From Heteronotia binoei (lineage: Eukaryota): a DNA stretch of 64,000 nt. The position numbers and the translations under genes were made by a program. The notes beneath the pieces were generated by a model. That model worked only from the letters and a program-made list of their open reading frames with translations. It was not told the origin of the DNA and made no database searches. Below, piece after piece: positions 3,105-51,576 of this stretch. The DNA lies in contig NC_083227.1 in the NCBI RefSeq assembly GCF_032191835.1, forward strand, positions 17,484,001 to 17,548,000, read 5' to 3'. Within the stretch, counting starts at the first letter, position 1. Each line of letters opens with the position of its first letter.

Positions 3105-4200
3105 AAGAACATATGAAGCTGCCTTCTACTGAATCAGACCATCGGTCCATCAAAGTCAGTACTGTCTACTCAGACTGGCAGTGGCTCTCCAGGGACTCAA
3201 GCTGAGGTTTTTCACGCCTACTTGCCTGGACCCTTTTCGTGTTTCAAACAATTTTATTAGTAACATATAGTAATAAATTTCAATTTCTTACATCATTACT
3301 TTTTTTTTTATCTATCCCATATATTACTTTCTACCCACCCCTCCCCCCATTACTTGACCCCTGCCGGTGTTATATACTTAAAATCTTAATATTAAAGGTA
3401 CCCTTAATTAATAAGAACCAAAATTAATATCCTCTTCCCTCTTGTACTTAGTCATTATCAAAAATTGTCCAATGTCCTTTTATTTTCCACTCTTTTTCTA
3501 CGTATCTTCTGAACTTTTTCCACTCCATCTTAATACTTCTAAATCATAGTCTCTTAAGGTTCTTGTTAACTTGTCCATTTCACTCCATGTCATAACTTTT
3601 ACAATCCAATCCCATTTCTCTGATATTTTTTCTTGCTTCCACAACTGTGCATACAATGTCCTAGCAGCTGAGAGCAAGTACCAAATTAAAACTCTATCTT
3701 CTTTTGGAATTTTTTCCATTTGTAATCCCAACAGAAAAGTCTCTGCAACTTTGTAAATTCGTATCCCAAGATCTTAGAAATCTCTTGTTGAATCATCTGC
3801 CAATACTTTTTCGCTCGTTCACAAGTCCACCACATATGGTAGAAAGAACCTTCATGTTTTTTACATTTCCAACATCTATCTGGCATCTTATTGTTCATCT
3901 TTGCCAACTTTTTAGGAGTCATATACCATCTGTACATCATCTTAAAACAATTTTCTTTAATACTCTGACATGTTGAGAGTTTCATAGAGTTCTTCCACAA
4001 ATATTCCCATGTGCCCATCTGTATTTCTTTATTTACATTAATTGCCCACTTAATCATTTGAGATTTCACTACTTCATCTTCCGTAGACCATTTTAAAAGT
4101 AACTTATCGCCTGGACCCTTTTCAGTTGGAGATGCCGGGGATTGAATCTGGGACCCTTCTGCTTACCAAGGAGATGCTCTACCACTGAGCCACCATCCCT
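3105..4200 (-). mobile_element. tRNA-derived SINE split by an L1 insertion (halves ~3105-3238 and 4109-4200)
   Basis: Both halves are the reverse complement of the SINE at 14221 and join across the duplicated gcctggacccttttc. Confidence 0.85.
3239..4108 (-). mobile_element. 5'-truncated L1-clade LINE (ORF2 C-terminus plus 3' UTR)
   Basis: ORFs 3686-4069 and 3498-3731 give KMMYRWYMTP..RCWKC...HMWWTC (L1 C-terminal CCHC region); 15-bp TSD at 3224-3238 and 4109-4123. Confidence 0.85.
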
Positions 4201-7335: not shown

Positions 7336-7803
7336 GCCTAGGAGCAAAAAAAATGACCATTTCTACCACAGAGCTTTTGCCTAAATACAGTGTTGCTTAG
7401 ATGGCGCTAGCATGATGGCATCACTTCCTGTGCAATTCCAGCGATATGGCCTGAGTCTTCTTTTTTCTCCTGGTAAGTCCCCCTCACCCTCCACCAGTTG
7501 CCAGGACACACCTGGCAACACAAGTGTTTAATACTTCCAGGTAGCACCTGAAAATCTCCCGCTATTACAAGATCAATTCTGCTGGAGAAAACGGGTGCTT
7601 TGGAGGGTGGACTCTATGCATTATGACCTGCTGAGATTGATCCTCTCCCTAAAACGTGCCCCCTCCAGACTCCACCCCCCAAAATCTCCAGGCATATCCT
7701 AACCCAGAGCAGGCAATCCTAATCAAGCAAACCTCACTTTCCTACATTTGTAACATGTTGGCCATCCTTTCCCCTCAAGACACTCAGAACCAAATTCTCC
7801 CAC

Positions 7804-8530
7804 CTCCCCTTCCTGTTTTTCATCCTCTTCCTGCCTTAGCAAGAACCCCTCAACCACAGCCACCGCCTGGATGCAGGTCTCTGGATTACGTTCCGTGACC
7901 CAACTCTGCATTTCCTGTGGCAAAATTACCATAAACTGCTCCAGGATCAGGAGCTCTAGAATCCTCTCCTTGGTGTGCTGCTCAGGCTTCAACCACTGAC
8001 GGCAAAGCTCCCAGAACTGCCCATAGACCTCTTGGGGACCCTCCATCTCTTGGTAGCGGAACTGCCTGAACCGCTGGCATTGTGTCTTCAGGTTGCCCTC
8101 TTTATCCTCCAGAATTTCTCCCTTCACTTTCACAGAAGAAATGAGGCCTTCTTGGGCTTCTTTAGGGAGGCCTCGTAAAATCTGGGCTGCAGATGCTCTT
8201 TTAGACTGTCGTCTGGCACAAGTTACTCCCTTGAAAGATACCAGGAGATTCTGAGTGACCTGCTCTGACCAGGCCTGAGGTGACTGGTGGACGTCTTGTT
8301 CCAAGCGTGGAGGCTGCATAGTCTTCAGGAAGTCCTGCCACTGGGATTCTCACTGTTGTAGTCCCTCATCTGGGTCTTGCTTGATGGGCTGTGAGGCAGC
8401 TCTAGGCAAAGGTTCCTCGATGGTTCCCACCTGGACAACGTGAGGGTCTCTTCCTTCTATTTTCAGTGACTTCTTTAATTTGGGTCCTGAAGAGTCCTAA
8501 GTCCTCCATTTTTATTCCTAGTATCAGCTT
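7804..8530 (-). pseudogene. Gene A: SCAN-domain exon, disrupted
   Basis: [47 protein letters not shown] is a SCAN domain; the presumed ATG at 8509 is out of frame (190 nt from 8319) and an in-frame TGA lies at 8352-8350; donor gtggga at 7803, acceptor at 8531. Confidence 0.85.
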
Positions 8531-14220: not shown

Positions 14221-14432
14221 GGGGAGGGACGGTGGCTCAGTGGTAGAGCATCTGTTGGGAAGCAGAAGGTCCCAGGTTCAATCCCTGGCATCTCCAAAAA
14301 AGGGTCCAGACAAATAGGTGTGAAAAACCTCAGCTTGAGACCCTGGAGAGCCGCTGCCAGTCTGAGAAGACAATACTGACTTTGATGGACCAAAGGTCTG
14401 ATTCAGTATAAGGCAGCTTCATATGTTCATAT
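14221..14432 (+). mobile_element. tRNA-derived SINE, young
   Basis: gtggctcagtggtagagc...ggttcaatccctggc head; atgtc flanks both ends; empty site in the paralogue at ~40790-40815. Confidence 0.85.
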
Positions 14433-17880: not shown

Positions 17881-18356
17881 GCCTCTCGACAGGGCTTGAC
17901 TTTGGCTTTGGTGCTTCTGGAGCAAAGGACTGTCTTTCCCAGCATGCCTTTCCGCTTGTCTTTGAAAGGAAGGCTGGATGTTGCATNNNNNNNNNNNNNN
18001 NNNNNNNNNNNNNNNNNNNNNNNNNNNNNNNNNNNNNNNNNNNNNNNNNNNNNNNNNNNNNNNNNNNNNNNNNNNNNNNNNNNNNNNNNNNNNNNNNNNN
18101 NNNNNNNNNNNNNNNNNNNNNNNNNNNNNNNNNNNNNNNNNNNNNNNNNNNNNNNNNNNNNNNNNNNNNNNNNNNNNNNNNNNNNNNNNNNNNNNNNNNN
18201 NNNNNNNNNNNNNNNNNNNNNNNNNNNNNNNNNNNNNNNNNNNNNNNNNNNNNNNNNNNNNNNNNNNNNNNNNNNNNNNNNNNNNNNNNNNNNNNNNNNN
18301 NNNNNNNNNNNNNNNNNNNNNNNNNNNNNNNNNNNNNNNNNNNNNNNNNNNNNNNN

Positions 18357-19520: not shown

Positions 19521-20711
19521 GCCTTTGCAAAGACATTCAGTCAGAGAATTATTATTATTTTTTATTATATTTGATGAATTGCCCTATCCTGGCCAGTGCC
19601 AGGGTCAGGGTAATATACAACGATAAAATCATGAGCAGCCGCTCATTAACACAATAAGCCCTGCTTGGCAGCAATATGGAGCCACACAGGGTCTTGCACT
19701 GCCCATTGCTCATTTTAAGATTACAGCAGTTATATTCTGCTCAGGATGAGCAGTCGTATTCTGCTTAGTAGGGGAACATCAGTCAGGAAAATTCCCAGCT
19801 TCCCTTTCAAGATCTGAGGCCTTCCCTCGGCATCTCCTGCTACCCAGCACCTGGTCACCATGGGGATAGCTGGCTGCCTTGTGCATCCTTGAGGCTTCTT
19901 TTCAAATGTAACATGCAAGATGGCAGAGATCTACATGGTACAAAGAACCACTACCAGGATCAAAAGTATTTACTAACAAGACAATGTTTATAAGCATACT
20001 CTCAACACAGCACCAGATTGAGCAAGGGATTCAAAGGAAATGGATAAAAAGTTATTCCTCTGTATCTCCTTCTATACATGCCCTATCAGTTGTTAAACAT
20101 GGCTGGCTCATTAGCTTAGAAAGTTACAGATTTTCACAGGAACTCCACTAATTACATGCCTCTTCCCCAAGTGTAGTCCAGCACCTGGCAATGGCTGCTT
20201 CCTCCAGACCTTAGTCAAGAGCTCTCTCTCCCTCGATGGAATGAGCACAAAAGAGCCCCTTTCTCCCAAAGTCTTATCATCTCTCTTTCCCCTCCCACTG
20301 ATTAGGTGAGGATAGATCAAAGATGCTTTTCCTGAAGTCTCCAGGAGTTTTTTCCTGAAGCCCTTCTAGCATTTATTCCTCCAGATCTCTGTTACCTGAT
20401 TTCAGGGAGAACTTGACTATCCCATTGTCTCTTGCCTGCTCTCTGCAAAGAGAGAGAAAACTTCTAAACTCAGAATGTAAGTTTTGCTCAGTTCAAACTT
20501 CTATTAGAAACTTCTATTAGAAAATGCAGAATCCCAAACAAGCATCTCTGATGCAGGAGGCTTAATGTACTTTGAAAGCATATATTATTGTACGCTTAAA
20601 TGTACAGCAGGAAGAAGACACTGAAATATTTGGAGTGTGGATTGAACTTCAGGCGCAGATTAGACTTCCTTTGTTTGGGTTCTAACAGGATCTCTGTGTT
20701 TATTCTAGCAG

Positions 20712-22690
20712 GGGATGATTGGCAGAACAAGGAGGATGAGGATCTGCATTTTCTATCAGCAGATGAAAACCAGAATGAAGATATGAGGGGAAACATCAGG
20801 AATCAAGAAAGACCTAAGAGGCAGAAAGGCAGCCATGTGGTTAAGAAGAGGGGCAAACCCATTCCTTATCTAAGGGAGGATTTCCAAGACATCATTCTCA
20901 TGGTAGAGGAAAAAGAGAAGAGCTTGGAGTGTGGAAGGAACATCTCAGACCAAACCCAATGTAATGTCCATTTACAAAGGTACAGTGGAACAAACACTCA
21001 TCAATGCTTGGAGACTGGAAAGACCACGATTCACAGAGCAGAGCTCCATAAACATCAAAGATCACATACAGGAGAGAAACCTTATAGGTACTTAGGCTGC
21101 AGCAAGAGCTTCTCCAAGACATCAGACCTTGTTCAGAACCACAGCATTCACTCAGAAGAGAAGCAGTTTATCTGCTCAGAGAGTGGAATGGTGTTCTCTG
21201 CTGGAAGAAAGCATAATGTACACTTCCCAAAGCCAAGTATAATGAAGGCACATAAGTGCTTTCAGTGTGGAAAATACTTCAGAAAAAGATCACATCTCAT
21301 TGCTCACCAAAAGATCCACAGAGAGAAAGAGTTCAAATGCTCAGAGTGTGGAAAGAAATTCAGTTGGCGTGGCCATCTTAAAGAGCATCAACGAACCCAC
21401 ACAGGGGAGAAGCCTTTTGAATGCTCAGAGTGTGGGAAGAGATTCAGTTGGAGTGGCACTCTTCAAAAGCATCGAGTAACTCACACAGGGGAGAAGCGCT
21501 TTGAATGCTCAGAGTGTGGGAAGAAATTCAGTCACAGTTATGGTCTTCAAAATCATTTAAGAATCCACACAGGAGAGAAGCCCTTTGAATGTTCAGAGTG
21601 CGGGAAGAGATTCCGTAGAAGTGACACTCTTCAAGAGCATCAACGAATCCACACAGGAGAGAAGCCCTTTGAATGCTCAGAGTGTGGGAAGAGATTCAGT
21701 TGGAGTGGCACTCTTCGACATCATCTAAGAACCCACACAGGGGAGAAGCCCTTTGAGTGCTCAATTTGTGGGAAGAGATTCTGTTGGAGTGGCCCTCTTC
21801 AACAGCATCAACGAACCCACACAGGAGAGAAGCCCTTTGAATGCTCAGAGTGTCAGAAAAGATTCAGTTCTAGTAGCATTCTTCGAAGACATTTAAGAAC
21901 CCACACAGGGGAGAAGCCCTTTGAATGCTCAGAGTGTGGGAGAACGTTCAGTCAGAGTAGCCATTTACGACAGCATCTAAGAACCCATACAGGGGAGAAG
22001 TCCTTTAAATGCCCAGAATGTGGGAAGAGGTTCAGTGAGAGCGGCTATTTTGAAGAGCATCAAAAAACCCACACAGGGGAGAAGCCTTTTGAATGTTCAG
22101 TATGTGGGAGGACATTCAGTCAGAGTAGCCATTTACAACAGCATTTAAGAACCCATACAAGGGAGAAGCCCTTTAAATGCTCAGAGTGTGGGAAGAGATT
22201 CAGTTGGAGTGGCACTCTTCAACATCATCTAAGAACCCACACAGGGGAGAAGCCCTTCGAATGCTCAGTTTGTGGGAAGAGGTTTAGTTGGACTGCCTCT
22301 CTTCAACAGCATCAACGTACCCACACAACAGAGAAGCCCTTTGAATGCTCAGAGTGTGGAAAGAGATTCAGTCATAGTAGCACTCTTCAACATCATCAGG
22401 GAACCCACACAGGGGAGAAGCCCTTTGAATGCTTAGAGTGTGGGAAGAGATTCAGTCGGAGTAGCACTCTTCAACAGCATCAACAAACCCATACAGAGGA
22501 GAAGCCGTTTGAATGCTCAGAGTGTGGGAGGAGATTCCGTCGGAAAGGCACTCTTCAACAGCATCAACAGACCCATACAGGGGAGAAACCCTTTGCATGC
22601 TCAGAGTGTGGGAAAACGTTCAGTCGGAGTGGTACTCTTCAAGAGCACCAAAGAACTGTTGGAGCAAGAATCTACATAAACCCAGTCTGA
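20712..22690 (+). CDS. Gene B zinc-finger exon: 16 intact C2H2 fingers, 17th cut by an LTR
   Basis: ctagcag acceptor in phase 1; regular [12 protein letters not shown] repeats; ends HQRT plus LTR-derived [10 protein letters not shown]-stop. Confidence 0.9.
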
Positions 22691-23054
22691 CAGCTACAGT
22701 ATGACAGCTGGTGATCTAGCTGCCAGGCTAGGTCACAGTAACCTGATCAGCAGACCGGCTTGAGCCGGCAGAAGCCAAGTGATGCAATCTGCTGAGTCAG
22801 CACGGCCAGGATTGGCTGCTTGGACTATATATGATCTGTGTGTGCATCACACAGGTCTCTCCCTGTGAGATGGTGGTTAGGCGAAGCACTTTGTCCGTGG
22901 AGGTGATATTGTATAGACTGCACAAGAGAGCACTTGTCGTGTATATATGTTAATACACCTTTTGGCACTAGTTGCACGTGTCTGCCTGATTTTCTTTCCT
23001 GAAGCCCTGTGTCGGGCAAGTCATCTCCCTCACTCTGCTACTCCCGCTCCGACA
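22657..23054 (+). repeat. 5' LTR
   Basis: tgttggagcaag...ctccgaca; no difference from 25978-26375 seen by eye; TATA-like tatata at ~22826. Confidence 0.95.
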
Positions 23055-23055
23055 G

Positions 23056-23069
23056 GGTTATGGGCCCAG
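23056..23069 (+). promoter_or_regulatory. Primer-binding site, copia type (internal tRNA-iMet fragment)
   Basis: ggttatgggcccag immediately after the 5' LTR. Confidence 0.85.
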
Positions 23070-23231
23070 GGCGGTTCCGCTGCGCGGAGGAGAGAGTTGA
23101 GAGTTGAGCTGACTGTGAGTTTGGAAAGAGCCGGAGGCGAGGAACGCCGGTGAAGGACACAGAAGCACCACCGTTCTCTGTTTGAGAGCCAGAGGGACGT
23201 CGGCAGCCAGCTGTGAGGAGGAGTCGGCACG

Positions 23232-25892
23232 ATGGCTCAGCAACAGCTTGGAGTAGCCGTTGAGAAGCTCACCTCAGCCAACTACGCGGTGTGGAGCCTG
23301 AGAATGCAACACTACCTCAAGCGTGAAGGGCAATGGCTGTTCGTGAGTAACCCCCCTGCCGACTTATCTCCTGCCGAGACTGTGTTATCGGATAAGGCAC
23401 TGGCCAACATAGTGCTATCTATAGGAGATGACCAGCTGGTTTATGTGCGAGGGAAGGACACTCCCAAGGCTGCCTGGGACGCGTTGAGTGCGGTGCATGT
23501 TAGCACCACTGCTGGTTCCCTCATGGCCTTGACAAGGAGGATGTTCCGCACCGTTATGCCGGCTGGAGGGTGTGTGAAAGATCACATCAAACGGCTAACG
23601 GACTGTTTCGTTGAGCTGGAGGCAAGAGGCAAGACTGTAGCTCCAGACGACAGAGTGTACATTTTGCTGTCGTCGTTGCCACCTGAGTACACTCCCCTGA
23701 TAACTTCTCTGGAGACGGTGGACGTAGCGACCCTGACCATGGAATACGTCTCTGCCCACCTGCTTGACTTCCAAGAGAGAATTGCGGCCGTGAGCTGTCC
23801 GGGGGTGTCGGCCGGGCAGCGTGCTGTTATCGGTGTGTCCGGGAAGACAGCCAAGAATGAGCCAGCTTCTGCTGCTGGCAGGCGTCCGAAGGTGGAGGAA
23901 GTGGAGCCGACTGCGTTTGCAGTCCGTCGCTGCTATGGATGCGGGTCGTCGCAGCACCTGCTCCGAGCTTGCCCTGAGAGGGAGAAGAGGCGGGGGCGTG
24001 TGCGGCGAGAGCGGAGGACCGCCAGCCCGTGTGAGGAAGCAACCCGGCTGGTCACGTCTGCAGTAGAGAGCACAGGGTCTGCTTGGATTTTAGACTCCGG
24101 GGCAACGAGCCATCTCTGCTGCGAGAAGGAGTTGTTGAAAAACATTGACAGTCCTGAGCATAAGTATGTGAGATTGGCTGATGGGACCACTGCCAATTCT
24201 GTTTGCTCAGGCAATGTGGAATTTCCTGCACTGAAATGTATGTTGCAAAATGTGTTGTATGTACCCTCACTGCAGTCTAACCTGTTGAGTGTTAGCACAC
24301 TGTTTGACCAGGGATACCAGGTGAGATTTGAGAAAACCTGCTGCAAAATCCTGGGAGGTGGGGGAAAGTTGCTTGTGACAGGAAAGAGGGAAGGTAAACT
24401 GTATGTGGTCCAGAGTGATTGTGCCCAGGTGGCTCAGGTGTCGAATGAGCCTGTGCACAATAATTGTATACATTTGCTCCATAGGAGACTTGGGCACTGC
24501 GGATTTAGGGCGTTAAAGAAAACCCTGGAGCTTGTGCCTAGTTTGAAAGTAAATCCTTGCAAATGTTACTTGGATTGCCAGGTCTGCAAGAAGACCAAAA
24601 GCAAGGCGTGTGCTGTTGCTAAAGAAAGCTCAAGGGAAAGCACACGAGCCCTGGAACTAGTCCATTTAGACGTTATTGGCCCATTGCCAAAGAGTCTGTC
24701 GGGGAGGAGATACTGCTTGGTGGCCACCGACGACCACACGAGGTACGCGTGGGTTTTCACCATGGTGCATAAGTCTGAGGTGTATAAGACATTCACCAAG
24801 TGGGTCAAAGCAGTGGAGAGACAATTAGGGGTTAATCTCCTAGCTGTACAAACCGACAGAGGGGGGGAATTCTTATCTAACCAGATGAAACGTTGGCTGG
24901 AGAACAAGGGCATTGCCCACCGTCTGACGAACCCGGCAACGCCCCGAGAAAATGGGCATGGGGCTGTATTGCAGAATGTGATGTATTGCATGTTAGAGGA
25001 TGCACAACTGCCAATGACCTATTGGGCAGAAACCATACATGCAGCTGTTTTTTTGCAAAATAGGGTTTGGTGTAATACTGTGAAAAATGTGCCTTACAGG
25101 TTACTGTTGAACAAGACCCCAGATTTGAGTTCTTTAAAAGTCTTTGGGTCACGGGCTCGGGTTGGCATCCACTCCACGAGTAGCGGGGAGGGGGATGTCC
25201 GGGCAGAGAGCCTAATTTTTCTGGGCTACAAGCCAAGGGCCAGGTGTTATCGTTTCTGCAATAGCAAAAGCAAGATAACACTTAGTAAGAGTGCCCAGTT
25301 CAATGAAGAAAGCAGCTGGCCAAGGTTGCACTCCTTGCAGAAACAATTTGTCCTGCTGCCAAGTAGCGATAACGATGTTGGAGCGCAGCCCAGAACTCCA
25401 GCCCAGGAGGTGGCACCCAGTGGGGCTGGAGAAGGTGAGCCGAATGCTGGCACAGAGCCTGACGAGCAGAGTCAGGAGGCAGAGCCTCAAATGCAGGAAC
25501 TGGAGGTAAAGTGTGAGAGTCAGGAGGTTCAACACCCAATTACAGGGGCAGAGCAACCAGCCCAGGAGGTGGGAACAGAGCAACCCGAAGAAGACAAAGC
25601 TGGTCCAAGCACAGGGCCACGGGTGTCTGCCAGGTCCACCAAAGGCCAACGTCCCGCTAGGTACAAGTGTCCCTATGTCACTCTGACTGTCAATCCAGAC
25701 CCACCCGGATTTGAGGAAATGTTAAAAGAAAAGGCTAAGAAATGGAAAGCCTGGGTGGCAGAGTGCGAGGCAAGGGAGAAGGAGGCTGAAGCCAAGCGTC
25801 TGAAAGAGCTGGCTGAACAGGAACACGATGATGTGTTTTACAATCATGATGAGTTCCTGAACGAATTCCGGAAAGGGTTCCGAGCTACGTAA
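23232..25892 (+). CDS. Copia Gag-protease-integrase polyprotein (886 aa), no RT
   Basis: Gag with CYGCGSSQHLLRAC knuckle, WILDSGATSH protease, HRRLGH..CQVC zinc-binding module, HLDVIGP/TDRGGEF integrase core, then an acidic tail; no YVDD RT motif. Confidence 0.92.
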   Translation: MAQQQLGVAVEKLTSANYAVWSLRMQHYLKREGQWLFVSNPPADLSPAETVLSDKALANIVLSIGDDQLVYVRGKDTPKAAWDALSAVHVSTTAGSLMALTRRMFRTVMPAGGCVKDHIKRLTDCFVELEARGKTVAPDDRVYILLSSLPPEYTPLITSLETVDVATLTMEYVSAHLLDFQERIAAVSCPGVSAGQRAVIGVSGKTAKNEPASAAGRRPKVEEVEPTAFAVRRCYGCGSSQHLLRACPEREKRRGRVRRERRTASPCEEATRLVTSAVESTGSAWILDSGATSHLCCEKELLKNIDSPEHKYVRLADGTTANSVCSGNVEFPALKCMLQNVLYVPSLQSNLLSVSTLFDQGYQVRFEKTCCKILGGGGKLLVTGKREGKLYVVQSDCAQVAQVSNEPVHNNCIHLLHRRLGHCGFRALKKTLELVPSLKVNPCKCYLDCQVCKKTKSKACAVAKESSRESTRALELVHLDVIGPLPKSLSGRRYCLVATDDHTRYAWVFTMVHKSEVYKTFTKWVKAVERQLGVNLLAVQTDRGGEFLSNQMKRWLENKGIAHRLTNPATPRENGHGAVLQNVMYCMLEDAQLPMTYWAETIHAAVFLQNRVWCNTVKNVPYRLLLNKTPDLSSLKVFGSRARVGIHSTSSGEGDVRAESLIFLGYKPRARCYRFCNSKSKITLSKSAQFNEESSWPRLHSLQKQFVLLPSSDNDVGAQPRTPAQEVAPSGAGEGEPNAGTEPDEQSQEAEPQMQELEVKCESQEVQHPITGAEQPAQEVGTEQPEEDKAGPSTGPRVSARSTKGQRPARYKCPYVTLTVNPDPPGFEEMLKEKAKKWKAWVAECEAREKEAEAKRLKELAEQEHDDVFYNHDEFLNEFRKGFRAT

Positions 25893-25977
25893 ATATGAAC
25901 TGTAATGTTGCTGGTGGACATGTATGTAAACTGTGTAAAGTGTTTTGGTGCACTGGGTTTAAATAGATTAGGAGGTG

Positions 25978-26900
<923 letters not shown>

Positions 26901-27629: not shown

Positions 27630-30135
27630 TGAAGAGCCAACACACCAGTTTGGTAGTATAACAAACCGTGTATTATACAGATATTTACAGTGAAGTTATA
27701 TACATATACAGTTCAGAGTAGCAAAGTGCTTTGCTAGTAATCCATATACATAGAGAGAAAAACCACTCTGGTACTCTGCTGCTTATATAGTACTGCCCAC
27801 CAATCAGGTAAACTGCTGACTCATGGTGATTCCTCTGGACAGATCCAGATATTGCCAATTCTTGCATCAGCCAGGTTGAGTAGTCCTGTGACTCTTGTCA
27901 TGTGATTAGCTGTCACTTTGACAGTTCTTGATCTAGCATGCTTCACAGCAGGCTACATAATACTAACACACCTCCTTAGACTGCTAGTGAATGCATGCCT
28001 AATAATTCAGCCAGTTTTGCATGTCTTTCATTGTACAGACATTTAGTAAACAGATCAGCAATGTTGTCCTCCGTGGCACATTTTTCCAATATCACAATTC
28101 CCCGAGTAACCCACTCTTTCACATTGTAATATCTGATTAGGATATGTTTACTCCTTCATCTGGCACATAAATTTTCAGCTAACTGCTTTGCAGCAGAACT
28201 ATCATTAAATACAGTGATTGCTTGGTCACATGTTACATTTAGATCTTTCATTAATTGTACAAGCCACTCCAGATTCAATACACATTCATTCAATGCACTG
28301 AATTCTGCTTCACGTGTGCCGCAAGCTACTAAAGTTTGCTTTACAGCCTTCTACATAATGAGTGCTCTTCCCAGGTACACTACAAACGCTGAAGTAGACA
28401 GCCTCTGGGCGATCTGCCCAGCTGGCAGTAAATTATTCCCTTTCAGCCTCCCTGTGGGAGAAAACATTCTTGTACAGAGATAAATATTCTCTTTCCATGG
28501 CTTCCAGCCAGGCCTTTTTCTCCTCATCTGCCAGAGTCATTATTTCCTGATAATTCTCAGATTTAGACACATACACATGGTTTACGCTGTTATCAAAACC
28601 ATATCATACAGGAGGAACACCTTTTGTACTACGGGATGAAACCATAGGGACGGTGGCTCAGTGGTAGAGAATCTGCTTGGGAAGCAGAAGGTCCCAGGTT
28701 CAATCCCCGGCATCTCCAAAAAAGGGTCCAGGCAAACAGGTGTGAAAAACCTCAGCTTGAGACCCTGGAGAGCCACTGCCAGTCTGAGAAGGCAATACTG
28801 ACTTTGATGGACCAAAGGTCTGATTCGGTATAAGGCAGCTTCATATGTTCATATGCTTCATATATGAAACCCGAGTCTCCTGACAGTCGTTTTGCTCGTT
28901 CTCAGATATCTCCTGCTGCACCACAGCAGGTACTGGTGCAGAGCCTTGTTCCTGACTATCATTGGTCAGTGGCAGCAATACATGAGTATTCCCTTCAGTT
29001 CTAGGCAGCTTAGCCTAATTGCTATGCTCACTGAAGTTAGCAGATCTACTGAACGTCACCTTCTGTTCAGTGTCACTAAACCTATATGGCTTCATATTGG
29101 TTTGATATCCCAGAAATATCAATTTTCTGGATCTGGCACCTCCTTTCCTTCTCAATTTCAGAGGAATATTAACCCAGGCTTTCGTTCCAAACACTCTGAG
29201 GAACTCTAAACTAGGCTCCTTCTTGAACATAGCCTTATAGGGGATATTATCTGTAGACTTCGTCCACAATCTATTGACCAAGAATGTGGCTACCATGAAT
29301 GCCTCAGCCCAATATGCAATAGGTAGCGATGCATCATCTAACATGGCATACATCATTGTTTGCAATATGTCAGCTTTCCTCTCAACCACCCCATTTTCTG
29401 AAGGTGTTGCCGGATTTGCCACCCTATGTGCAATCCCCTGATGCTTCAACCATGTACCAAATTGATTTGACATGAATTCACCCCCTCTGTCAGTCTGTAG
29501 AGCTAGCAGCTGTACTCCAAGCTGCTTCTGTACTCTTTTAGCCCACTGTTTAAAGCATTGAAACACTTCTGACTTCTGTTTTAGTACATAAGACCAACAA
29601 TATCTTGTACAGTCATCCACTATCAGAAATACATATCTGTTAGATGAATGGCTCTTTGGAAATGGCCCAATAATATCAGCATGGATTAGAGCTAGCGGTC
29701 GCTCAGACACCCTCACGCTCTCCTTAGCTACCGGGAATGCCTTGCTTTTGACCTTTTTGCACACTTGGCAGTCTAGATATGCTTTACAAGATTTTACAGC
29801 TACATTTGGCAGCAAAGTCAGCGTCTTGCTAATAGTATGAAAACTTGAATGCCCAAGTCTACGGTGGAGGAGGTATAAACATGAATCATGGGAGCATACA
29901 ATAGACACTTGATCTGCCTTAACGGCTTCACTCCCCACCACATATACATCATCAACCAACTTTCCCTCTGTGAGAATTTTTCCACCTTTAGACACTTTAC
30001 AGCCTGTGTCAGAAAACTTCACTAACAGGGCAGGCACCTTACTTGGACTGTTGCAAGCCTGACCATACCTTCCTGAGTCAGTCTGAACTCCCAAGACTGA
30101 ACTCAACTGACTGACTGCCAACTCTGAACTATCTG
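27630..30135 (-). mobile_element. Older Copia element: 3' LTR, RNase H remnant, integrase; RT core and Gag missing
   Basis: ORF 29015-30121 has HRRLGH..CQVC, HADIIGP, TDRGGEF, ENGVVER; RNase H-like text at 27990-28450 (KQTLVA..EAEF..NIADLFTK); PPT ctaaggaggtg then TGTTAG LTR from 27968. The LTR far end (27630 or ~27545) is uncertain. Confidence 0.85.
28647..28863 (+). mobile_element. tRNA-derived SINE nested in the older Copia
   Basis: Near-identical to 14221-14432; atgaaacc flanks both sides. Confidence 0.9.
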
Positions 30136-32937: not shown

Positions 32938-33359
32938 GTTTCCAGTAATATCTTATTTAATTTATAACTCAGCATAATGTGGTTCCTAATAAGGGATACT
33001 ATAGTGACTTGTTAGTTTTCTAATACATGTCATTCCTTATTTGTATCAGATATGGTTTTCTGCATTTTGTTATTAACTCTTGTACTTGTTATTTTGTAAA
33101 TTCTTTCAGTGTATTGGCTTGGTAGTGTATGTGAAGTATAAGTTTAAATNNNNNNNNNNNNNNNNNNNNNNNNNNNNNNNNNNNNNNNNNNNNNNNNNNN
33201 NNNNNNNNNNNNNNNNNNNNNNNNNNNNNNNNNNNNNNNNNNNNNNNNNNNNNNNNNNNNNNNNNNNNNNNNNNNNNNNNNNNNNNNNNNNNNNNNNNNN
33301 NTGAAAAATACCAATAAGGTATTTTTGGTGTATTTATTTGGCTCAGTATATATCAAACC

Positions 33360-45607: not shown

Positions 45608-48252
45608 TATAGGGATAGGGAGGGAAGGGTTGGAGGTGGGGTGGCTCTGTATGTCAGAGAGGATATACGGTCCGGCAAGACTGAGGTCAGAGAATTAGAT
45701 TCCCTTTTAGAAATGCTTTGGGTTGAAATAGAGGGCCCAAAAGGAAATTTAACTATGGGAGTTTATCGCCCACCAAATCAAAAGAGAGAAGACGATTATA
45801 ATATGATGGAAGGATTAAAGATAGCGGCTAAACGTAAAAACTGTGTTGTAATAGGTGATTTTAACTACCCTCAGATTGATTGGGTCAATATGTGTTCTGG
45901 TCGAGAGAAAGAGATTGAGTTTCTTGATGCTCTCAATGACTGTGCTATGGAGCAGATGGTCTCAGAACCTACCAGAGGTGGGGCGATCCTGGATCTGGTC
46001 CTAAGTAATGCCCAAGACTTAGTGAGAGACGTAAAAGTGATTGCGCCGCTTGGGAACAGTGACCATAATGTTATTGATTTCACCGTTTGTATAAATAGGG
46101 AGTTGCCCAAAAAGACCGCCACAACCACATTTAACTTTAAAAGGGGTAAATTCTCTGAGATGAGGAGGCATGTGAGGAGGAAACTGAAAGGAAAGGTAAA
46201 TACGGTCAAAACCCTTGGGGAAGCTTGGAGACTATTTAAAACTATAATCCTAGAAGCTCAGATAAAATACATACCACAAGTTAGGAAAGGCACAAACAGG
46301 TATAAGAAGAGGCCAGCATGGTTAACAAACAAAGTAATGGAAGCTGTAAAAGGTAAGAAGGACTCCTTTAAGCGGTGGAAAACCAGTCCAAGTGAGATTA
46401 ATAAAAGGGAACACAGGCAGTGGCAAATCAAATGCAAGACTGTGATCAGGCAGGCAAAAAGGGACTATGAGGAGCATATTGCAAAAAACATAAAGACCAA
46501 CAATAAAACTTTCTTCAAATATATTAGAAGTAGGAAACCAGCCAGGGAAGCAGTGGGGCCCTTGGATGACCATGGGGTAAAAGGATTACTGAAGGAGGAT
46601 GGGGAAATGGCTGAGAAGCTGAATGCATTTTTTGCCTCCGTCTTCACCGTGGAAGATGAGAAGTGTTTGCCCGCCCCAGAACCACTAATATTGGAAGGGG
46701 TGTTGAAAGACCTGAGTCAGATTGAGGTGACAAAAGAGGAGGTCCTACAACTAATAGACAAATTAAAAACTAATAAGTCACCGGGTCCGGATGGCATACA
46801 TCCGAGAGTTCTGAAAGAACTCAAAGTTGAACTTGTGGATCTTCTAACAAAAATCTGTAATCTTTCATTGAAATCTGCCTCTGTTCCTGAGGACTGGAAG
46901 GTAGCAAATGTCACCCCGATCTTTAAAAAGGGTTCCAGAGGAGATCCAGGAAATTACAGGCCAGTCAGTCTGACTTCAATACCGGGAAAGTTGGTAGAAA
47001 CCATTATCAAGGACAGAATGAGTAGGCACATTGATGAACACAGGTTATTGAGGAAGACTCAGCATGGGTTCTGTAAGGGAAGATCTTGCCTCACTAACCT
47101 GTTACATTTCTTTGAGGGAGTAAACAAACTTGTGGACAAAGGAGACCCGATAGATGTTGTTTACCTTGACTTCCAGAAAGCTTTTGATAAAGTTCCTCAT
47201 CAAAGGCTCCTTAGAAAGCTTGAGAGTCATGGAGTAAAAGGACAGGTCCTCTTGTGGATCAAAAACTGGCTGAGTAATAGGAAGCAGAGAGTGAGTATAA
47301 ATGGGCAGTCTTCGCATTGGAGGACGGTAAGCAGTGGGGTGCCGCAGGGCTCGGTACTGGGTCCCATGCTCTTTAACTTGTTCATAAATGATTTAGAGTT
47401 GGGAGTGAGCAGTGAAGTGGCCAAATTTGCGGATGACACTAAATTGTTCAGGGTGGTGAGAACCAGAGAGGATTGTGAGGAACTCCAAAGGGATCTGTTG
47501 AGGCTGGGTGAGTGGGCGTCAACGTGGCAGATGCGGTTCAATGTGGCCAAGTGCAAAGTAATGCACATTGGGGCCAAGAATCCCAGCTACAAATACAAGT
47601 TGATGGGGTGTGAACTGGCAGAGACTGACCAAGAGAGAGATCTTGGGGTCGTGGTAGATAATTCACTGAAAATGTCAAGGCAGTGTGCGTTTGCAATAAA
47701 AAAGGCCAACGCCATGCTGGGAATTATTAGGAAGGGAATTGAAAACAAATCAGCCAGTATCATAATGCCCCTGTATAAATCGATGGTGCGGTCTCATTTG
47801 GAGTACTGTGTGCAGTTCTGGTTGCCACACCTCAAAAAGGATATTATAGCATTGGAGAAAGTTCAGAAAAGGGCAACTAGAATGATTAAAGGGCTGGAAC
47901 ACCTTCCCTATGAAGAAAGGTTGAAACGCTTAGGGCTCTTTAGCTTGGAGAAACGTCGACTGAGGGGTGACATGATAGAGGTTTACAAGATAATGCATGG
48001 GATGGAGAAAGTAGAGAAAGAAGTACTTTTCTCCCTTTCTCACAATACGAGAACTCGTGGGCATTCGATGAAATTGCTGAGCAGACAGGTTAAAACGGAT
48101 AAAAGGAAGTACTTCTTCACCCAAAGGGTGATTAACATGTGGAATTCACTGCCACAGGAGGTGGTGGCGGCCACAAGCATGCCACCTTCAAGAGGGGGTT
48201 AGATAAAAATATGGAGCAGAGGTCCATCAGTGGCTATTAGCCACAGTGTGTA

Positions 48253-49438: not shown

Positions 49439-51576
49439 GAAATGATCAGCATAACAAGGAAGATGGGGAACAGCATCCTTTATCCCCAGATAAAATCCAG
49501 AATGAAGACATGAGTGGAAGCTTCAGGAATCAAGGAAAACCTAAGAGGGAGAAAGGCAGCCATGTGGTCAAGAAGAGGGACAAACCCATTCCTTGCCAAG
49601 GGGGGGATTTCCAAGAAGCCATTCACATGGTGGAGGAAAAAGACAAGGGCTTGGAGTGTGGAAGGAACATCTCAGATCAAACCCAATATAATATCCATTT
49701 AGAAATGCACAGTGGAAAAAAGACCCAGTCCCTGGAGAGTAGAAAGAAAATGATTTGCAGAGCAGAGCTTTGTAGACATCAAATAATACATACAGGAAAG
49801 AAACCTTATAGGTGTTCAGATTGTGGCAAGAGTGTTCCAGAGAAATCAGACTTTGTTCAGCACCAAAGGATTCACTCAGGAGAGAAGCAGTTTATCTACT
49901 CAGACAATGGAATGGTGTCCTCTGGTGAAAAAAAGCATAATCTACACTTCCCAAAGCCCAGTATAATGAAGGCACATAAATGCTTTCAGTGTGGAAAGTA
50001 CTTCAAATATAGAACACATCTCATTGTGCACCAAAAGGTCCACAGAGGGGAGAAACCGTTTGAATGCTCAGAGTGCAGGAAGAGATTCAGTTCCAATAGC
50101 CTTCTTCGAAGACATTTAGGAACCCACTCAGAGGAGAGGCCCTTTGAATGCTCAGAGTGTGGGAAGAGATTCCGTTCCAGTGGCCATCTTAAAGAACATC
50201 GACGAACCCACACAGGGGAGAAGCCTTTTGAATGCTCAGAGTGTGGAAAGAGATTCAGTCAGAGTAGCCATCTTCAAAAGCATCAAGTAACCCACACAGG
50301 AGAGAAGCCCTTTGAATGCTCAGAGTGTGGGAAGAGATTCAGTGACACTTGTGGTCTTCAAAGTCATCTAAGAACCCACACAGGGGAGAAGCCCTTTGAA
50401 TGCTTAGAATGCGGGAAGAGATTCCGTCGGAGTGACGGTCTTCAAGAGCATCAACGAACCCACACGGGAGAGAAGCCCTTTGAATGCTCAGAGTGTGGGA
50501 AGGCATTTAGTTCTAGTAGCAGTCTTCAGAAGCATCGACGGATCCACACAGGGGAGAAGCCCTTTGAATGCTCAGAGTGTGGGAAGAGATTCAATCACAG
50601 TTGTGGTCTTCAAAATCATGTAAGAACCCACAGAGGGGAGAAGCCCTTTGCATGCTCAGAGTGTGGGAAGAGATTCAGTCACAGTTGTGGTCTTCAAAAT
50701 CATCTAAGAACCCATACAGGGGAAAAGCCTTTTGAATGCTCAGAGTGTGGGAAGAGGTACAGTCTCAGTGGCAGTTTGCAACAGCATCAACGGACCCACA
50801 CAGGGGAGAAGCCCTTTGAATGCTCCGAGTGTGGGAAGACATTTAGTCGAAGTGGCTATTTTCAAGAGCATCAAAGAATCCACACAGGGGAAAAGCCTTT
50901 TAAATGCTCCGAGTGTGGGAGGACATTTATTCAGAGAAGCCACTTACAACAGCATCTAAGAACTCATACAAGGGAGAAACCCTTTGAATGCTCAGAGTGT
51001 GGGAAGACATTCAGTCGGAGAGCCTCTCTTCAGCAGCATTTAAGAACCCATACAGGGGAGAAGCCCTTCGAATGCTCAGAATGTGGAAAGAAATTCAGTC
51101 TCAGTGGCATTTTTCAACAGCATCAACGAACCCACACAGGGAATAATCCCTTTGAATGTTCAGTGTGTGGGAAGAGATTCAGTCTCATTGGCAGTTTTCA
51201 ACAGCATCAACGAACCCACACAGAAGAGAAGCCCTTTCAATGCTCAGTGTGTTGGAAGAGATTTAATCGGAGTTGCAATCTTCAACAGCATCAACAAACC
51301 CACACAGGGGAGAAGCCCTTTGAATGCTCACAGTGTGGGAGGAGATTCCGTCAGAAATGCACTCTTCAACAGCATCAGAGTATCCACACAGGGGAGAAGC
51401 CCTTTGAATGTTCAGACTGTGAGAAAACATTCAGTCGGAGAGCCACTCTTCAACAGCATCAAAGAACCCACACAGGGGAGAAGCCCTTTGAATGTTCAGA
51501 GTGTGGGAAAAGATATAGTTGGCATGGCAGTTTTCGACAGCATCAGCGAACCCACAGAGGGGAGAAGTCCTTTTGA
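49439..51576 (+). CDS. Gene C zinc-finger exon, 20 C2H2 fingers
   Basis: ccaacag acceptor in phase 1; open to TGA at 51576; assembled CDS 423+115+71+127+2138 = 2874 nt (957 aa). Confidence 0.93.

What the first reader, a model, noticed from the sequence alone, without database searches (positions are those of the whole stretch)
23232..25892. RT-less, integrase-dead Copia that keeps a single open 886-aa ORF
Gag, knuckle and protease motifs are intact. The integrase lacks the catalytic Glu: residue 36 after the D of TDRGGEF is Ala in ENGHGAVLQ versus Glu in ENGVVERKADILQ of the neighbouring element, a 4-residue in-frame loss. RT/RNase H is replaced by a charged tail after a PPGFEEM..W remnant of the pre-RT motif. 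PBS, PPT and twin LTRs are intact and the insertion is recent. This suggests a non-autonomous family that supplies its own capsid and protease but borrows RT and integrase in trans.
Basis: partly seen in the sequence, partly recalled or inferred. Interest (0 to 1): 0.8.

Follow-up and report, generated by a model that had tools for sequence, protein, structure and literature searches.

The report
RT-less lizard Copia retrotransposon, freshly inserted
This is a young copy of a lizard-type Copia jumping gene that still encodes its capsid, protease and a catalytically dead integrase but has lost its reverse transcriptase, so it must have been copied by a relative's enzymes; this is a known way of life for such elements.

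Summary
A 3,719-bp LTR retrotransposon (22657-26375) has two identical 398-bp LTRs, a 5-bp target duplication, a PBS matching the anticodon arm of initiator tRNA-Met, a PPT, and one 886-codon ORF. The ORF encodes Gag, a CCHC knuckle, protease and integrase. RVT_2 and RNase H are absent. A 12-nt in-frame gap removes the invariant integrase Glu. The element sits inside a zinc-finger gene exon in what is probably a gecko genome.

The element cannot be autonomous. Whether it belongs to a family could not be tested: no relative above 47% identity exists in any searchable collection. Indirect evidence says the defects predate this insertion. Gag, PR and IN score as well as in related lizard Copias. 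The last trace of RNase H is frame-broken and unrecognisable to a profile that still scores an old dead neighbour at 65 bits.

A parallel case shows the layout can spread. In another animal assembly, five RT-less Copia copies share one deletion junction, have their own target duplications, and show dN/dS of about 0.2 across Gag, PR and IN.

Verdict: an ordinary semi-autonomous deletion derivative, a new member of a known kind. The dead integrase may be private to this copy.

The parts
22652..22656 (+). 5' copy of the target-site duplication (AGAAC)
   Evidence: The same pentamer lies at 26376-26380. Removing the element and one TSD copy restores a perfect C2H2 linker...[13 protein letters not shown]....
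22657..23054 (+). 5' LTR, 398 bp, TGTTGG...CCGACA
   Evidence: 398/398 identical to 25978-26375. The termini resemble those of the Podarcis Copia L003, TGTTGG...GCGACA.
23055..23085 (+). Primer-binding site matching the antisense of initiator tRNA-Met from the anticodon loop towards the 5' end
   Evidence: 15/15 bases match, then 2/5, then 11/11, against the tRNAiMet antisense probe printed in PMC5648532 and PMC1797187. The same PBS type occurs in L003 and L002.
23232..25892 (+). Single ORF of 886 aa: Gag - CCHC - protease - integrase (Glu missing) - acidic linker - pre-RT motif - 35-aa tail
23310..23780 (+). Gag (Retrotran_gag_2, residues 27-183)
   Evidence: Pfam 83 bits. Scores 157 bits against a profile of 110 relatives, versus 111 bits for Podarcis L003.
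23931..23972 (+). CCHC zinc knuckle (CX2CX4HX4C, residues 234-247)
   Evidence: All four ligands sit in columns that are 99% conserved.
24084..24317 (+). Aspartic protease (Pol_BBD, residues 285-362; DSG at 288-290)
   Evidence: Pfam 71 bits; D, S and G conserved.
24399..24599 (+). Integrase N-terminal zinc domain (H417, H422, C449, C452)
   Evidence: Pfam gag_pre-integrs; the four ligands sit in 100%-conserved columns.
24645..24956 (+). Integrase catalytic core with D480 and D542 but no Glu. The 12-nt gap falls between codons 575 and 576 (nt 24956/24957).
   Evidence: Pfam rve 48.6 bits. The Glu column (100% conserved) and the Arg column (99%) are gapped. A 12-nt gap is seen against two lizard Copias. 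The core scores 153 bits versus 169-174 in those two.
25110..25319 (+). Integrase SH3-like C-terminal domain (residues 627-696)
   Evidence: Pfam 49.7 bits; 82 bits against the profile of relatives versus 84-94 in the lizard relatives.
25620..25784 (+). Pre-RT motif (R.S.RSTKG..P.RY ... PPGFEEM..W.AW), the last part that aligns to relatives
   Evidence: Aligns to the neighbour up to residue 851 and to L003 up to residue 847. In relatives RVT_2 begins just after this point.
25785..25889 (+). 35-residue C-terminal tail with no detectable homology (D+E 9, K+R 6). The 5' edge of the RT-RNase H deletion lies at or just before it.
   Evidence: No Pfam hit. No hit to a profile of Copia C-termini in any frame.
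25886..25940 (+). Degenerate trace of the RNase H C-terminus (..CNVA / DMYVNCV..), starting out of frame with the ORF and with a frame break near 25913-25916
   Evidence: Frameshift-aware alignment to the L003 C-terminus scores 36; 1 of 200 shuffles reaches that. The trace is not seen by the profile that gives 23-26 bits to the same 33 residues of L003 and the neighbour.
25961..25977 (+). Polypurine tract (AAATAGATTAGGAGGTG) abutting the 3' LTR
   Evidence: L003 has ..TTAAGGAGGAG before its 3' LTR.
25978..26375 (+). 3' LTR
   Evidence: Identical to the 5' LTR.
26376..26380 (+). 3' copy of the target-site duplication (AGAAC)

Best explanation
The element is a non-autonomous ('semi-autonomous') deletion derivative of a squamate Ty1/Copia LTR retrotransposon.

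Shown by sequence:
- It has complete cis signals: identical LTRs, a tRNAiMet half-type PBS and a PPT.
- It encodes an intact Gag-CCHC-protease-integrase polyprotein.
- The whole RT-RNase H module, about 1.3 kb, is gone.
- The integrase lacks its catalytic Glu.
- It integrated with a normal 5-bp duplication.

Inferred mechanism: the RNA template of this copy was already RT-less. It was packaged into particles containing the Gag-Pol polyprotein of a related autonomous Copia, possibly with help from its own Gag acting in cis. It was reverse-transcribed from a tRNAiMet 5'-half primer by the helper's RT/RNase H. It was then inserted by the helper's integrase, which recognises the shared TGTTGG...GACA ends.

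The RT deletion itself most likely arose by a microhomology-guided template switch, as it did in the two parallel cases whose junctions could be mapped. Whether the 12-nt integrase deletion is inherited or arose in the last copying cycle cannot be told from one copy.
For: Architecture and missing domains.

Loss of the integrase Glu by one 12-nt gap.

Identical LTRs, TSD and clean empty-site reconstruction.

PBS matches antisense tRNAiMet. A half-tRNA primer in Drosophila copia is stated in PMC5371799.

Differential preservation, in bits against profiles of 106-110 relatives:
- Retained domains (ours / Podarcis L003 / neighbour): gag 157/111/absent, knuckle+PR 111/94/absent, IN-Zn 29/25/26, IN core 153/169/174, SH3 82/94/84.
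- RNase H C-end: -1 or lower for ours, against 68.6 and 65.3.
- Last 33 residues: no hit for ours, against 23.4 and 26.2.
- The remnant also carries a frame break.
The LTRs are identical, so this decay must predate the insertion.

Proof of principle from the L002 family: five copies at different loci, each with its own TSD. The LTR pairs are identical in three copies; the fourth complete pair differs by an indel. All share one deletion junction, all ORFs are open, dS is 0.06-0.10 and dN/dS is 0.14-0.30 (gag 0.22, PR 0.23, IN 0.17).

Junction microhomology without GT..AG in two mapped cases.

Precedents from papers: IAP I-delta-1 (PMC6466679), and the semi-autonomous Sabrina/WHAM elements with the 'dead on arrival' notion (PMC9744471).
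Against: - Only one copy of this family is available, and no helper was found. The only other Copia in the window is 41% identical and itself defective.
- Homology of the RNase H remnant rests on a 17-residue frameshift-aware alignment (about 1 in 200 shuffles). A DNA-level alignment of the same region was not significant (60 of 300 shuffles).
- If the region after the junction is simply not RNase H-derived, the 'decay' argument weakens to a 30-residue stretch.
- Lesions made in the very last reverse-transcription cycle leave the same picture in a single copy.
Confidence: 0.7

Rival explanations
1. Dead-on-arrival copy. An autonomous parent RNA was reverse-transcribed with errors in a single cycle. 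The RT-RNase H deletion, the 12-nt integrase deletion and the 3' damage are all private to this copy, and no non-autonomous lineage exists.
For: A single copy cannot exclude it. Dead-on-arrival copies are reported to be common (PMC9744471). Template-switch deletions of the same region arise repeatedly. The neighbour shows an RT deletion with a well-preserved RNase H remnant, the pattern expected of a one-off deletion.
Against: It needs at least three independent lesions, plus substitutions at positions conserved in 96-97% of relatives (the ADxxTK motif), in one cycle, while 690 codons of Gag-PR-IN stayed as conserved as in relatives.
Confidence: 0.2
2. A full-length autonomous element inserted here and the deletions happened afterwards in the chromosome.
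For: Genomic deletions in LTR elements are common. The upper bound on the insertion age is a few million years.
Against: Zero substitutions in 2 x 398 bp of LTR and none that close the 886-codon ORF. Over the same time the 3' 190 bp would have had to collect several indels and many substitutions.
Confidence: 0.05
3. The RT-less form comes from reverse transcription of a spliced subgenomic RNA, not from a template-switch deletion.
For: The 5' edges of RT deletions in four independent Copias cluster within about 50 residues at the IN/RT boundary.
Against: In the two cases where a close full-length relative allowed mapping, the edges carry 5-12 nt of microhomology and no GT..AG. The clustering may come from searching with a Gag-PR-IN query. 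The junction of the window element could not be mapped.
Confidence: 0.04
4. The ORF is a host gene domesticated from a Copia Gag-PR-IN.
For: A long intact ORF with a catalytically dead enzyme domain is a pattern seen in domesticated genes.
Against: Identical LTRs, TSD, PBS and PPT, insertion inside another gene's exon, and no orthologue in any annotated squamate proteome.
Confidence: 0.01

Closest known systems
Squamate Ty1/Copia elements, for example the Podarcis lilfordi copy fetched as L003. The literature places squamate Copia in the Mtanga clade (PMC11889832).
   Same: Domain order Gag-CCHC-PR-IN-(RT-RH). LTR ends TGTTGG...GACA. The PBS covers the same stretch of tRNAiMet. The PPT is ..AGGAGG. 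The TSD of the window element is 5 bp. Amino-acid identity is 38-48%.
   Different: L003 keeps RVT_2, RNase H and the integrase Glu. The window element has none of the three. Clade membership could not be tested here because clades are defined on RT/RNase H.
Drosophila copia
   Same: Single-ORF Copia. The PBS is complementary to an internal part of initiator tRNA-Met, implying a half-tRNA primer (PMC5371799; match).
   Different: Distant in sequence. Drosophila copia is autonomous. By my own recollection, not checked here, its known short form is a spliced Gag-PR RNA rather than an RT-less genomic copy.
RT-less Copia family found here in ENA assembly ERZ26858995 (loci L002, L006-L009)
   Same: Layout LTR-Gag-PR-IN-LTR, about 3.05 kb, with the same PBS type. 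The RT-RNase H module is excised from the RT N-terminus to the last ~20 residues. The LTRs are young and identical, and the TSD is 5 bp.
   Different: Only 32% identical. It is multi-copy with a proven shared junction and dN/dS of about 0.2. Its integrase Glu is intact and IN is under selection. Its tail is the in-frame natural C-terminus.
Mouse IAP I-delta-1 elements
   Same: An internally deleted LTR element with one open fusion ORF. It is non-autonomous and needs proteins in trans. [quoted passage not shown]
   Different: It is a betaretrovirus-like ERV. The deletion removes parts of gag and pol rather than the RT-RH module. The behaviour is experimentally demonstrated there and only inferred here.
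Semi-autonomous plant LTR retrotransposons (wheat RLG_Sabrina_SA and RLG_WHAM with RLG_Wilma; barley BARE2 with BARE1)
   Same: They retain part of the coding capacity (GAG-Pro) and rely on a partner that shares the PBS and LTR termini (PMC9744471).
   Different: Sabrina, WHAM and Wilma are Gypsy elements. They lack integrase as well, are high-copy, and the partner is identified. BARE2 loses Gag rather than RT.
LARD / TRIM non-autonomous LTR elements
   Same: They have LTRs, a PBS and a PPT, and are mobilised in trans (my own knowledge, not checked here).
   Different: By definition they have no Gag, PR or IN coding capacity. This element has an 886-codon ORF.

Membership tests
Ty1/Copia LTR retrotransposon | Copia-type Gag, protease and integrase domains, with integrase upstream of the RT position | tested here: met
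   Pfam Retrotran_gag_2, Pol_BBD, gag_pre-integrs, rve and SH3_retrovirus occur in that order, and the pre-RT motif follows IN.
Ty1/Copia LTR retrotransposon | Direct LTRs with TG..CA ends, a 5-bp TSD, and PBS and PPT adjacent to the LTRs | tested here: met
Ty1/Copia LTR retrotransposon | RVT_2 reverse transcriptase and RNase H | tested here: not met
   No RVT_2 hit. tblastn with full-length polyproteins stops at about residue 770. No RNase H profile hit in any frame. The element is therefore a derivative and not a complete member.
Autonomous retrotransposon | Integrase D,D-35-E catalytic triad | tested here: not met
   D480 and D542 are present. The Glu column, 100% conserved in 110 relatives, is gapped, and residue +36 is Ala.
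Non-autonomous family (several copies sharing the deletions) | Two or more insertions at different loci with the same junctions | tested here: inconclusive
   No second copy in the window. No relative above 47% identity in the protein collections. The PBS pattern scans found only unrelated DNA. The source genome itself is not searchable with these tools.
Semi-autonomous element (IAP I-delta-1 or Sabrina_SA type) | The retained ORF is under purifying selection | tested here: inconclusive
   Only indirect for this element: retained domains score like those of relatives while the RNase H remnant has decayed. The feature is met in the parallel L002 family, with dN/dS 0.14-0.30.
Semi-autonomous element (IAP I-delta-1 or Sabrina_SA type) | An autonomous partner in the same genome with matching PBS and LTR termini | not testable with these tools
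   The neighbour is 41% identical and defective. Podarcis L003 shares the PBS and LTR ends but comes from another species.
LARD / TRIM | No Gag or Pol coding capacity | tested here: not met
   886-aa ORF with five Pfam domains.
Domesticated Gag/integrase host gene | Loss of LTRs and TSD, with conserved synteny across species | tested here: not met
   Identical LTRs and a TSD. No orthologues found.

The most novel reading that the evidence does not exclude
The Glu-less integrase may be a fixed feature of an RT-less squamate Copia lineage rather than damage private to this copy. In that reading the Gag-PR-IN* protein is kept by selection for a non-catalytic role: cis-acting packaging or scaffolding, or interference with the helper's intasome. 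The element would then be a parasite of, or brake on, autonomous Copias in a clade where Copia copy numbers are the highest among animals. More broadly, RT-less Gag-PR-IN Copias may form a widespread class that RT/RNase H-based surveys cannot see.
Probability: 0.12. Interest if true: 0.6.

Novelty: new member of a known kind. Interest (0 to 1): 0.33.

Why it matters
For the window itself the finding adds little beyond annotation. It is a young, non-autonomous Copia that has truncated a zinc-finger gene.

Two points go a little further. First, Copia elements that keep Gag, protease and integrase but drop only the RT-RNase H module turn up independently in a gecko-like genome and in unrelated animal assemblies. 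In one case they form a multi-copy family under purifying selection on all three retained proteins. This means such elements need their own proteins to spread. It also gives a natural system for asking which Copia functions must act in cis.

Second, published surveys of animal Copia classify copies by RT/RNase H (PMC11889832). Elements of this kind are therefore not counted, and Copia activity in squamates may be underestimated.

Tried and rejected
- Other copies of the family. blastn and tblastn of the element against the window found only itself and a 41%-identical fragment. The search for homologous proteins (best 32%) and the exhaustive representative search (best 44%) found no close relative. 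The LTR-end/PBS pattern in metagenome and viral contigs gave two unrelated contigs and none.
- Neighbour as helper. Rejected: it is 41% identical, carries stops, is 5'-truncated and is RT-deleted itself.
- Tail as an in-frame RNase H C-terminus. A profile of 106 Copia C-termini finds nothing in any frame, nor in read-throughs with X at the breaks. A DNA local alignment to L003 is not significant. Only a frameshift-aware protein-to-DNA alignment gives a 17-residue match.
- Several conserved integrase residues near the Glu looked substituted. Comparison with lizard relatives showed these are lineage-typical, so a single 12-nt gap explains the difference.
- Rfam search of the PBS region for a partial tRNA match gave only noise. 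The match was established instead against tRNAiMet probe sequences printed in two papers.
- Splicing as the origin of RT-less copies. There are no GT..AG signals at the two mappable junctions.
- DNA for the P0497 locus could not be fetched. That junction was read from the protein and its full-length relative L011.
- Structure prediction was not run, because the alignment evidence for the missing Glu was already unambiguous.
- Literature searches found no description of RT-less Gag-PR-IN Copia families. Absence from an open-access library does not prove novelty, and curated repeat libraries could not be consulted.
Full report
**What is there.** It lies inside a complete LTR retrotransposon of 3,719 bp (22657-26375).
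- The two LTRs (22657-23054 and 25978-26375) are identical over all 398 bp. They begin TGTTGG and end CCGACA.
- They are flanked by the pentamer AGAAC on both sides.
- Removing the element and one AGAAC restores an uninterrupted C2H2 finger linker...[13 protein letters not shown].... The insertion is therefore a clean integrase-type event inside the coding exon of a zinc-finger gene.
- With no LTR differences, my arithmetic for assumed neutral rates of 2e-9, 1e-9 and 0.5e-9 per site per year gives 95% upper bounds on the age of about 1.9, 3.8 and 7.5 Myr.

**Primer site.** The sequence directly after the 5' LTR matches the antisense of vertebrate initiator tRNA-Met, as printed in two papers (PMC5648532, PMC1797187). 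The match runs 15/15 bases, then 2/5, then 11/11. It starts in the anticodon loop and runs towards the tRNA 5' end. This implies a half-tRNA primer, as stated for Drosophila copia (PMC5371799). A Podarcis lilfordi Copia (L003) and an unrelated RT-less Copia (L002) carry the same PBS type. A purine-rich tract abuts the 3' LTR.

**Coding capacity.** Pfam finds Copia Gag, the Pol beta-barrel protease, the pre-integrase zinc domain, the integrase core and the SH3-like domain, in that order. It finds no RVT_2 or RNase H. Full-length relatives score 220-270 bits on RVT_2. tblastn with three full-length polyproteins stops at about residue 770 of each.

I aligned the ORF with 110 full-length relatives. 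The four CCHC ligands, the protease DSG, the integrase H-H-C-C residues and both catalytic Asp are all present. The column that holds Glu in every relative is a gap. Counting from D542, residue +36 is Ala. DNA alignment with the neighbour and with L003 shows one 12-nt in-frame gap; the flanking residues that looked aberrant are normal for this lizard lineage. The integrase should therefore fold but not catalyse, by inference from the established D,D-35-E chemistry.

**The 3' end.** The ORF aligns to relatives up to the pre-RT motif (residues ~800-851). The next 35 residues have no detectable homology.

A frameshift-aware alignment to the C-terminus of L003 finds a 17-residue match (..CNVA / DMYVNCV..) at 25886-25940. 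It starts out of frame with the ORF, overlaps its stop codon and has a frame break near 25913-25916. One of 200 shuffles reaches its score. A plain DNA alignment of the same region is not significant.

A profile of 106 Copia C-termini gives 68.6 and 65.3 bits to the last 73 residues of L003 and of the old neighbour, and 23-26 bits to their last 33 residues. It gives nothing to the window element, even when that is read through with X at the breaks.

The retained domains tell the opposite story. Scores are in bits against profiles of the relatives:

| Domain | This element | Podarcis L003 | Neighbour |
|---|---|---|---|
| Gag | 157 | 111 | absent |
| Knuckle + PR | 111 | 94 | absent |
| IN zinc | 29 | 25 | 26 |
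| IN core | 153 | 169 | 174 |
| SH3-like | 82 | 94 | 84 |

**What this implies.** The element cannot copy itself. Its clean TSD shows that a working integrase, and necessarily an RT, acted on it.

A single copy cannot separate two readings: an already defective template mobilised in trans, or an intact parent copied with errors once. I favour the first, at about 0.7. The second would need at least three independent lesions in one cycle: the ~1.3-kb deletion, the 12-nt gap and the frame break, plus loss of the near-invariant ADxxTK residues in the remnant. Meanwhile about 690 codons of Gag-PR-IN stayed as conserved as in relatives. The identical LTRs mean that the decay of the RNase H trace predates this insertion. 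The argument rests partly on a short, modestly significant alignment, and I mark it as inference.

**Relatives and host.** No protein closer than 32% (word-indexed search) or 44% (exhaustive search) was found. The closest named proteins are Copia fragments of the lizard Podarcis lilfordi. At the DNA level their locus L003 is a nearly full-length Copia with 99.2%-identical LTRs and the same LTR ends and PBS.

The interrupted zinc-finger protein is most similar (60-70%) to gecko proteins from Heteronotia, Euleptes, Paroedura and Sphaerodactylus. The window is therefore probably from a gecko that is absent from the protein collections.

Squamate Copias are reported as Mtanga-clade and unusually abundant. 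That survey classifies copies by RT/RNase H, so it cannot see RT-less copies (PMC11889832).

**The neighbour.** However, it is 41% identical, has stop codons, lacks Gag and PR, and is itself RT-deleted. It passes from the first ~11 residues of RT to the last ~143 residues of RNase H within about 50 nt. It is a comparator, not a partner.

**Parallel cases elsewhere.** The searches turned up other Copias that keep Gag-PR-IN and lack RT.
- *L002 family.* In ENA assembly ERZ26858995, five copies (L002, L006-L009) lie on different contigs. Each of the four complete copies has its own 5-bp TSD. Three have identical LTR pairs and the fourth pair differs by an indel. Elements are 3,047-3,050 bp with the same PBS type and one shared deletion junction. 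All five ORFs, of 841-842 codons, are open. Pairwise dS is 0.06-0.10 and dN/dS 0.14-0.30 (gag 0.22, PR 0.23, IN 0.17, linker 0.38). This is a propagating RT-less family whose own Gag, protease and integrase are under selection, and its integrase keeps the Glu.
- *Origin of the L002 deletion.* Against its closest full-length relative (77% identity, L010), the deletion edges carry a 12-nt imperfect repeat and no GT..AG.
- *Second pair.* P0497 against P0519 (94% identity) shows an RT deletion with AAAT(T)GG microhomology. Its layout resembles that of the window's neighbour.
- *Third case.* P0096 (845 aa, four near-identical variants on ~3.1-3.8-kb contigs) also ends just after the integrase. An RNase H C-end trace lies in its 3' untranslated part.

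The clustering of 5' edges near the IN/RT boundary may partly reflect my searching with a Gag-PR-IN query.

**Comparison with known systems.** Functionally the closest are mouse IAP I-delta-1 and the semi-autonomous wheat elements.
- IAP I-delta-1 is an internally deleted element with one fusion ORF that acts in cis. [quoted passage not shown]
- Wheat Sabrina_SA and WHAM keep GAG-Pro and depend on Wilma. The partnership is recognised by shared PBS and LTR termini (PMC9744471).
- The element is not a LARD or TRIM, since it codes for protein. It is not a domesticated gene, since it has identical LTRs and a TSD.

**Verdict.** The element is a new member of a known kind. The modest added value is the evidence that RT-less Gag-PR-IN Copias recur and can be maintained by selection.

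Noticed in passing
window 20600-22690 and 26376-26560: The element sits inside the coding exon of a C2H2 zinc-finger gene, in a finger linker. The host ORF now runs 10 codons into the LTR and stops. Without the insertion it would continue for about one more finger before a stop. Further fingers downstream (to about 26920) already carry stops and a frame slip. Whether the insertion is fixed or polymorphic is unknown.
   Followed up: partly
window ~27994-30121 (- strand): A second, older Copia fragment, 41% identical. It is 5'-truncated after the protease and has stop codons. It is also RT-deleted: integrase plus the first ~11 RT residues are joined to the last ~143 residues of RNase H. That RNase H remnant is still well conserved (99 bits).
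   Followed up: yes
window 28647-28718 (+), 14226-14296 (+), 4127-4199 (-): Three tRNA-like sequences above the Rfam tRNA threshold. The first lies inside the linker of the old Copia fragment. They are probably heads of tRNA-derived SINEs rather than tRNA genes.
   Followed up: no
window 45641-48202 (+) and 57135-60251 (+): Two long ORFs (853 and 1,038 aa) with endonuclease (Exo_endo_phos) and RVT_1 domains. They are LINE-type non-LTR retrotransposon ORF2s and look young.
   Followed up: no
window 7723-8319 (-) and 49510-51576 (+): A SCAN-domain ORF and a second array of 84-bp C2H2 finger repeats about 80% identical to the first. The window lies in a SCAN/zinc-finger gene cluster. The best protein matches are to geckos (60-70%).
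   Followed up: partly
loci L002, L006, L007, L008, L009 (ENA ERZ26858995): A multi-copy RT-less Copia family (LTR-Gag-PR-IN-LTR, ~3.05 kb) with one shared deletion junction, separate TSDs, and dN/dS of 0.14-0.30 on all retained domains. Its 90%-identity protein cluster has 25 members. The host organism is unidentified (an animal, judging from neighbouring genes).
   Followed up: yes
proteins P0497 / P0519 (locus L011), P0434 / P0430, P0096 (locus L001): Further RT-less or RT-truncated Copia polyproteins with close full-length relatives or several near-identical variants. P0497 equals P0519 minus residues 813-1146. P0434 is 98.5% identical to P0430 over 824 residues and then ends. P0096 has four 845-aa variants on ~3.1-3.8-kb contigs. 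Such forms look common among animal Copias.
   Followed up: partly
window 17987-18356 and 33150-33301: Two runs of N. They were left untouched, and neither touches the element.
   Followed up: no
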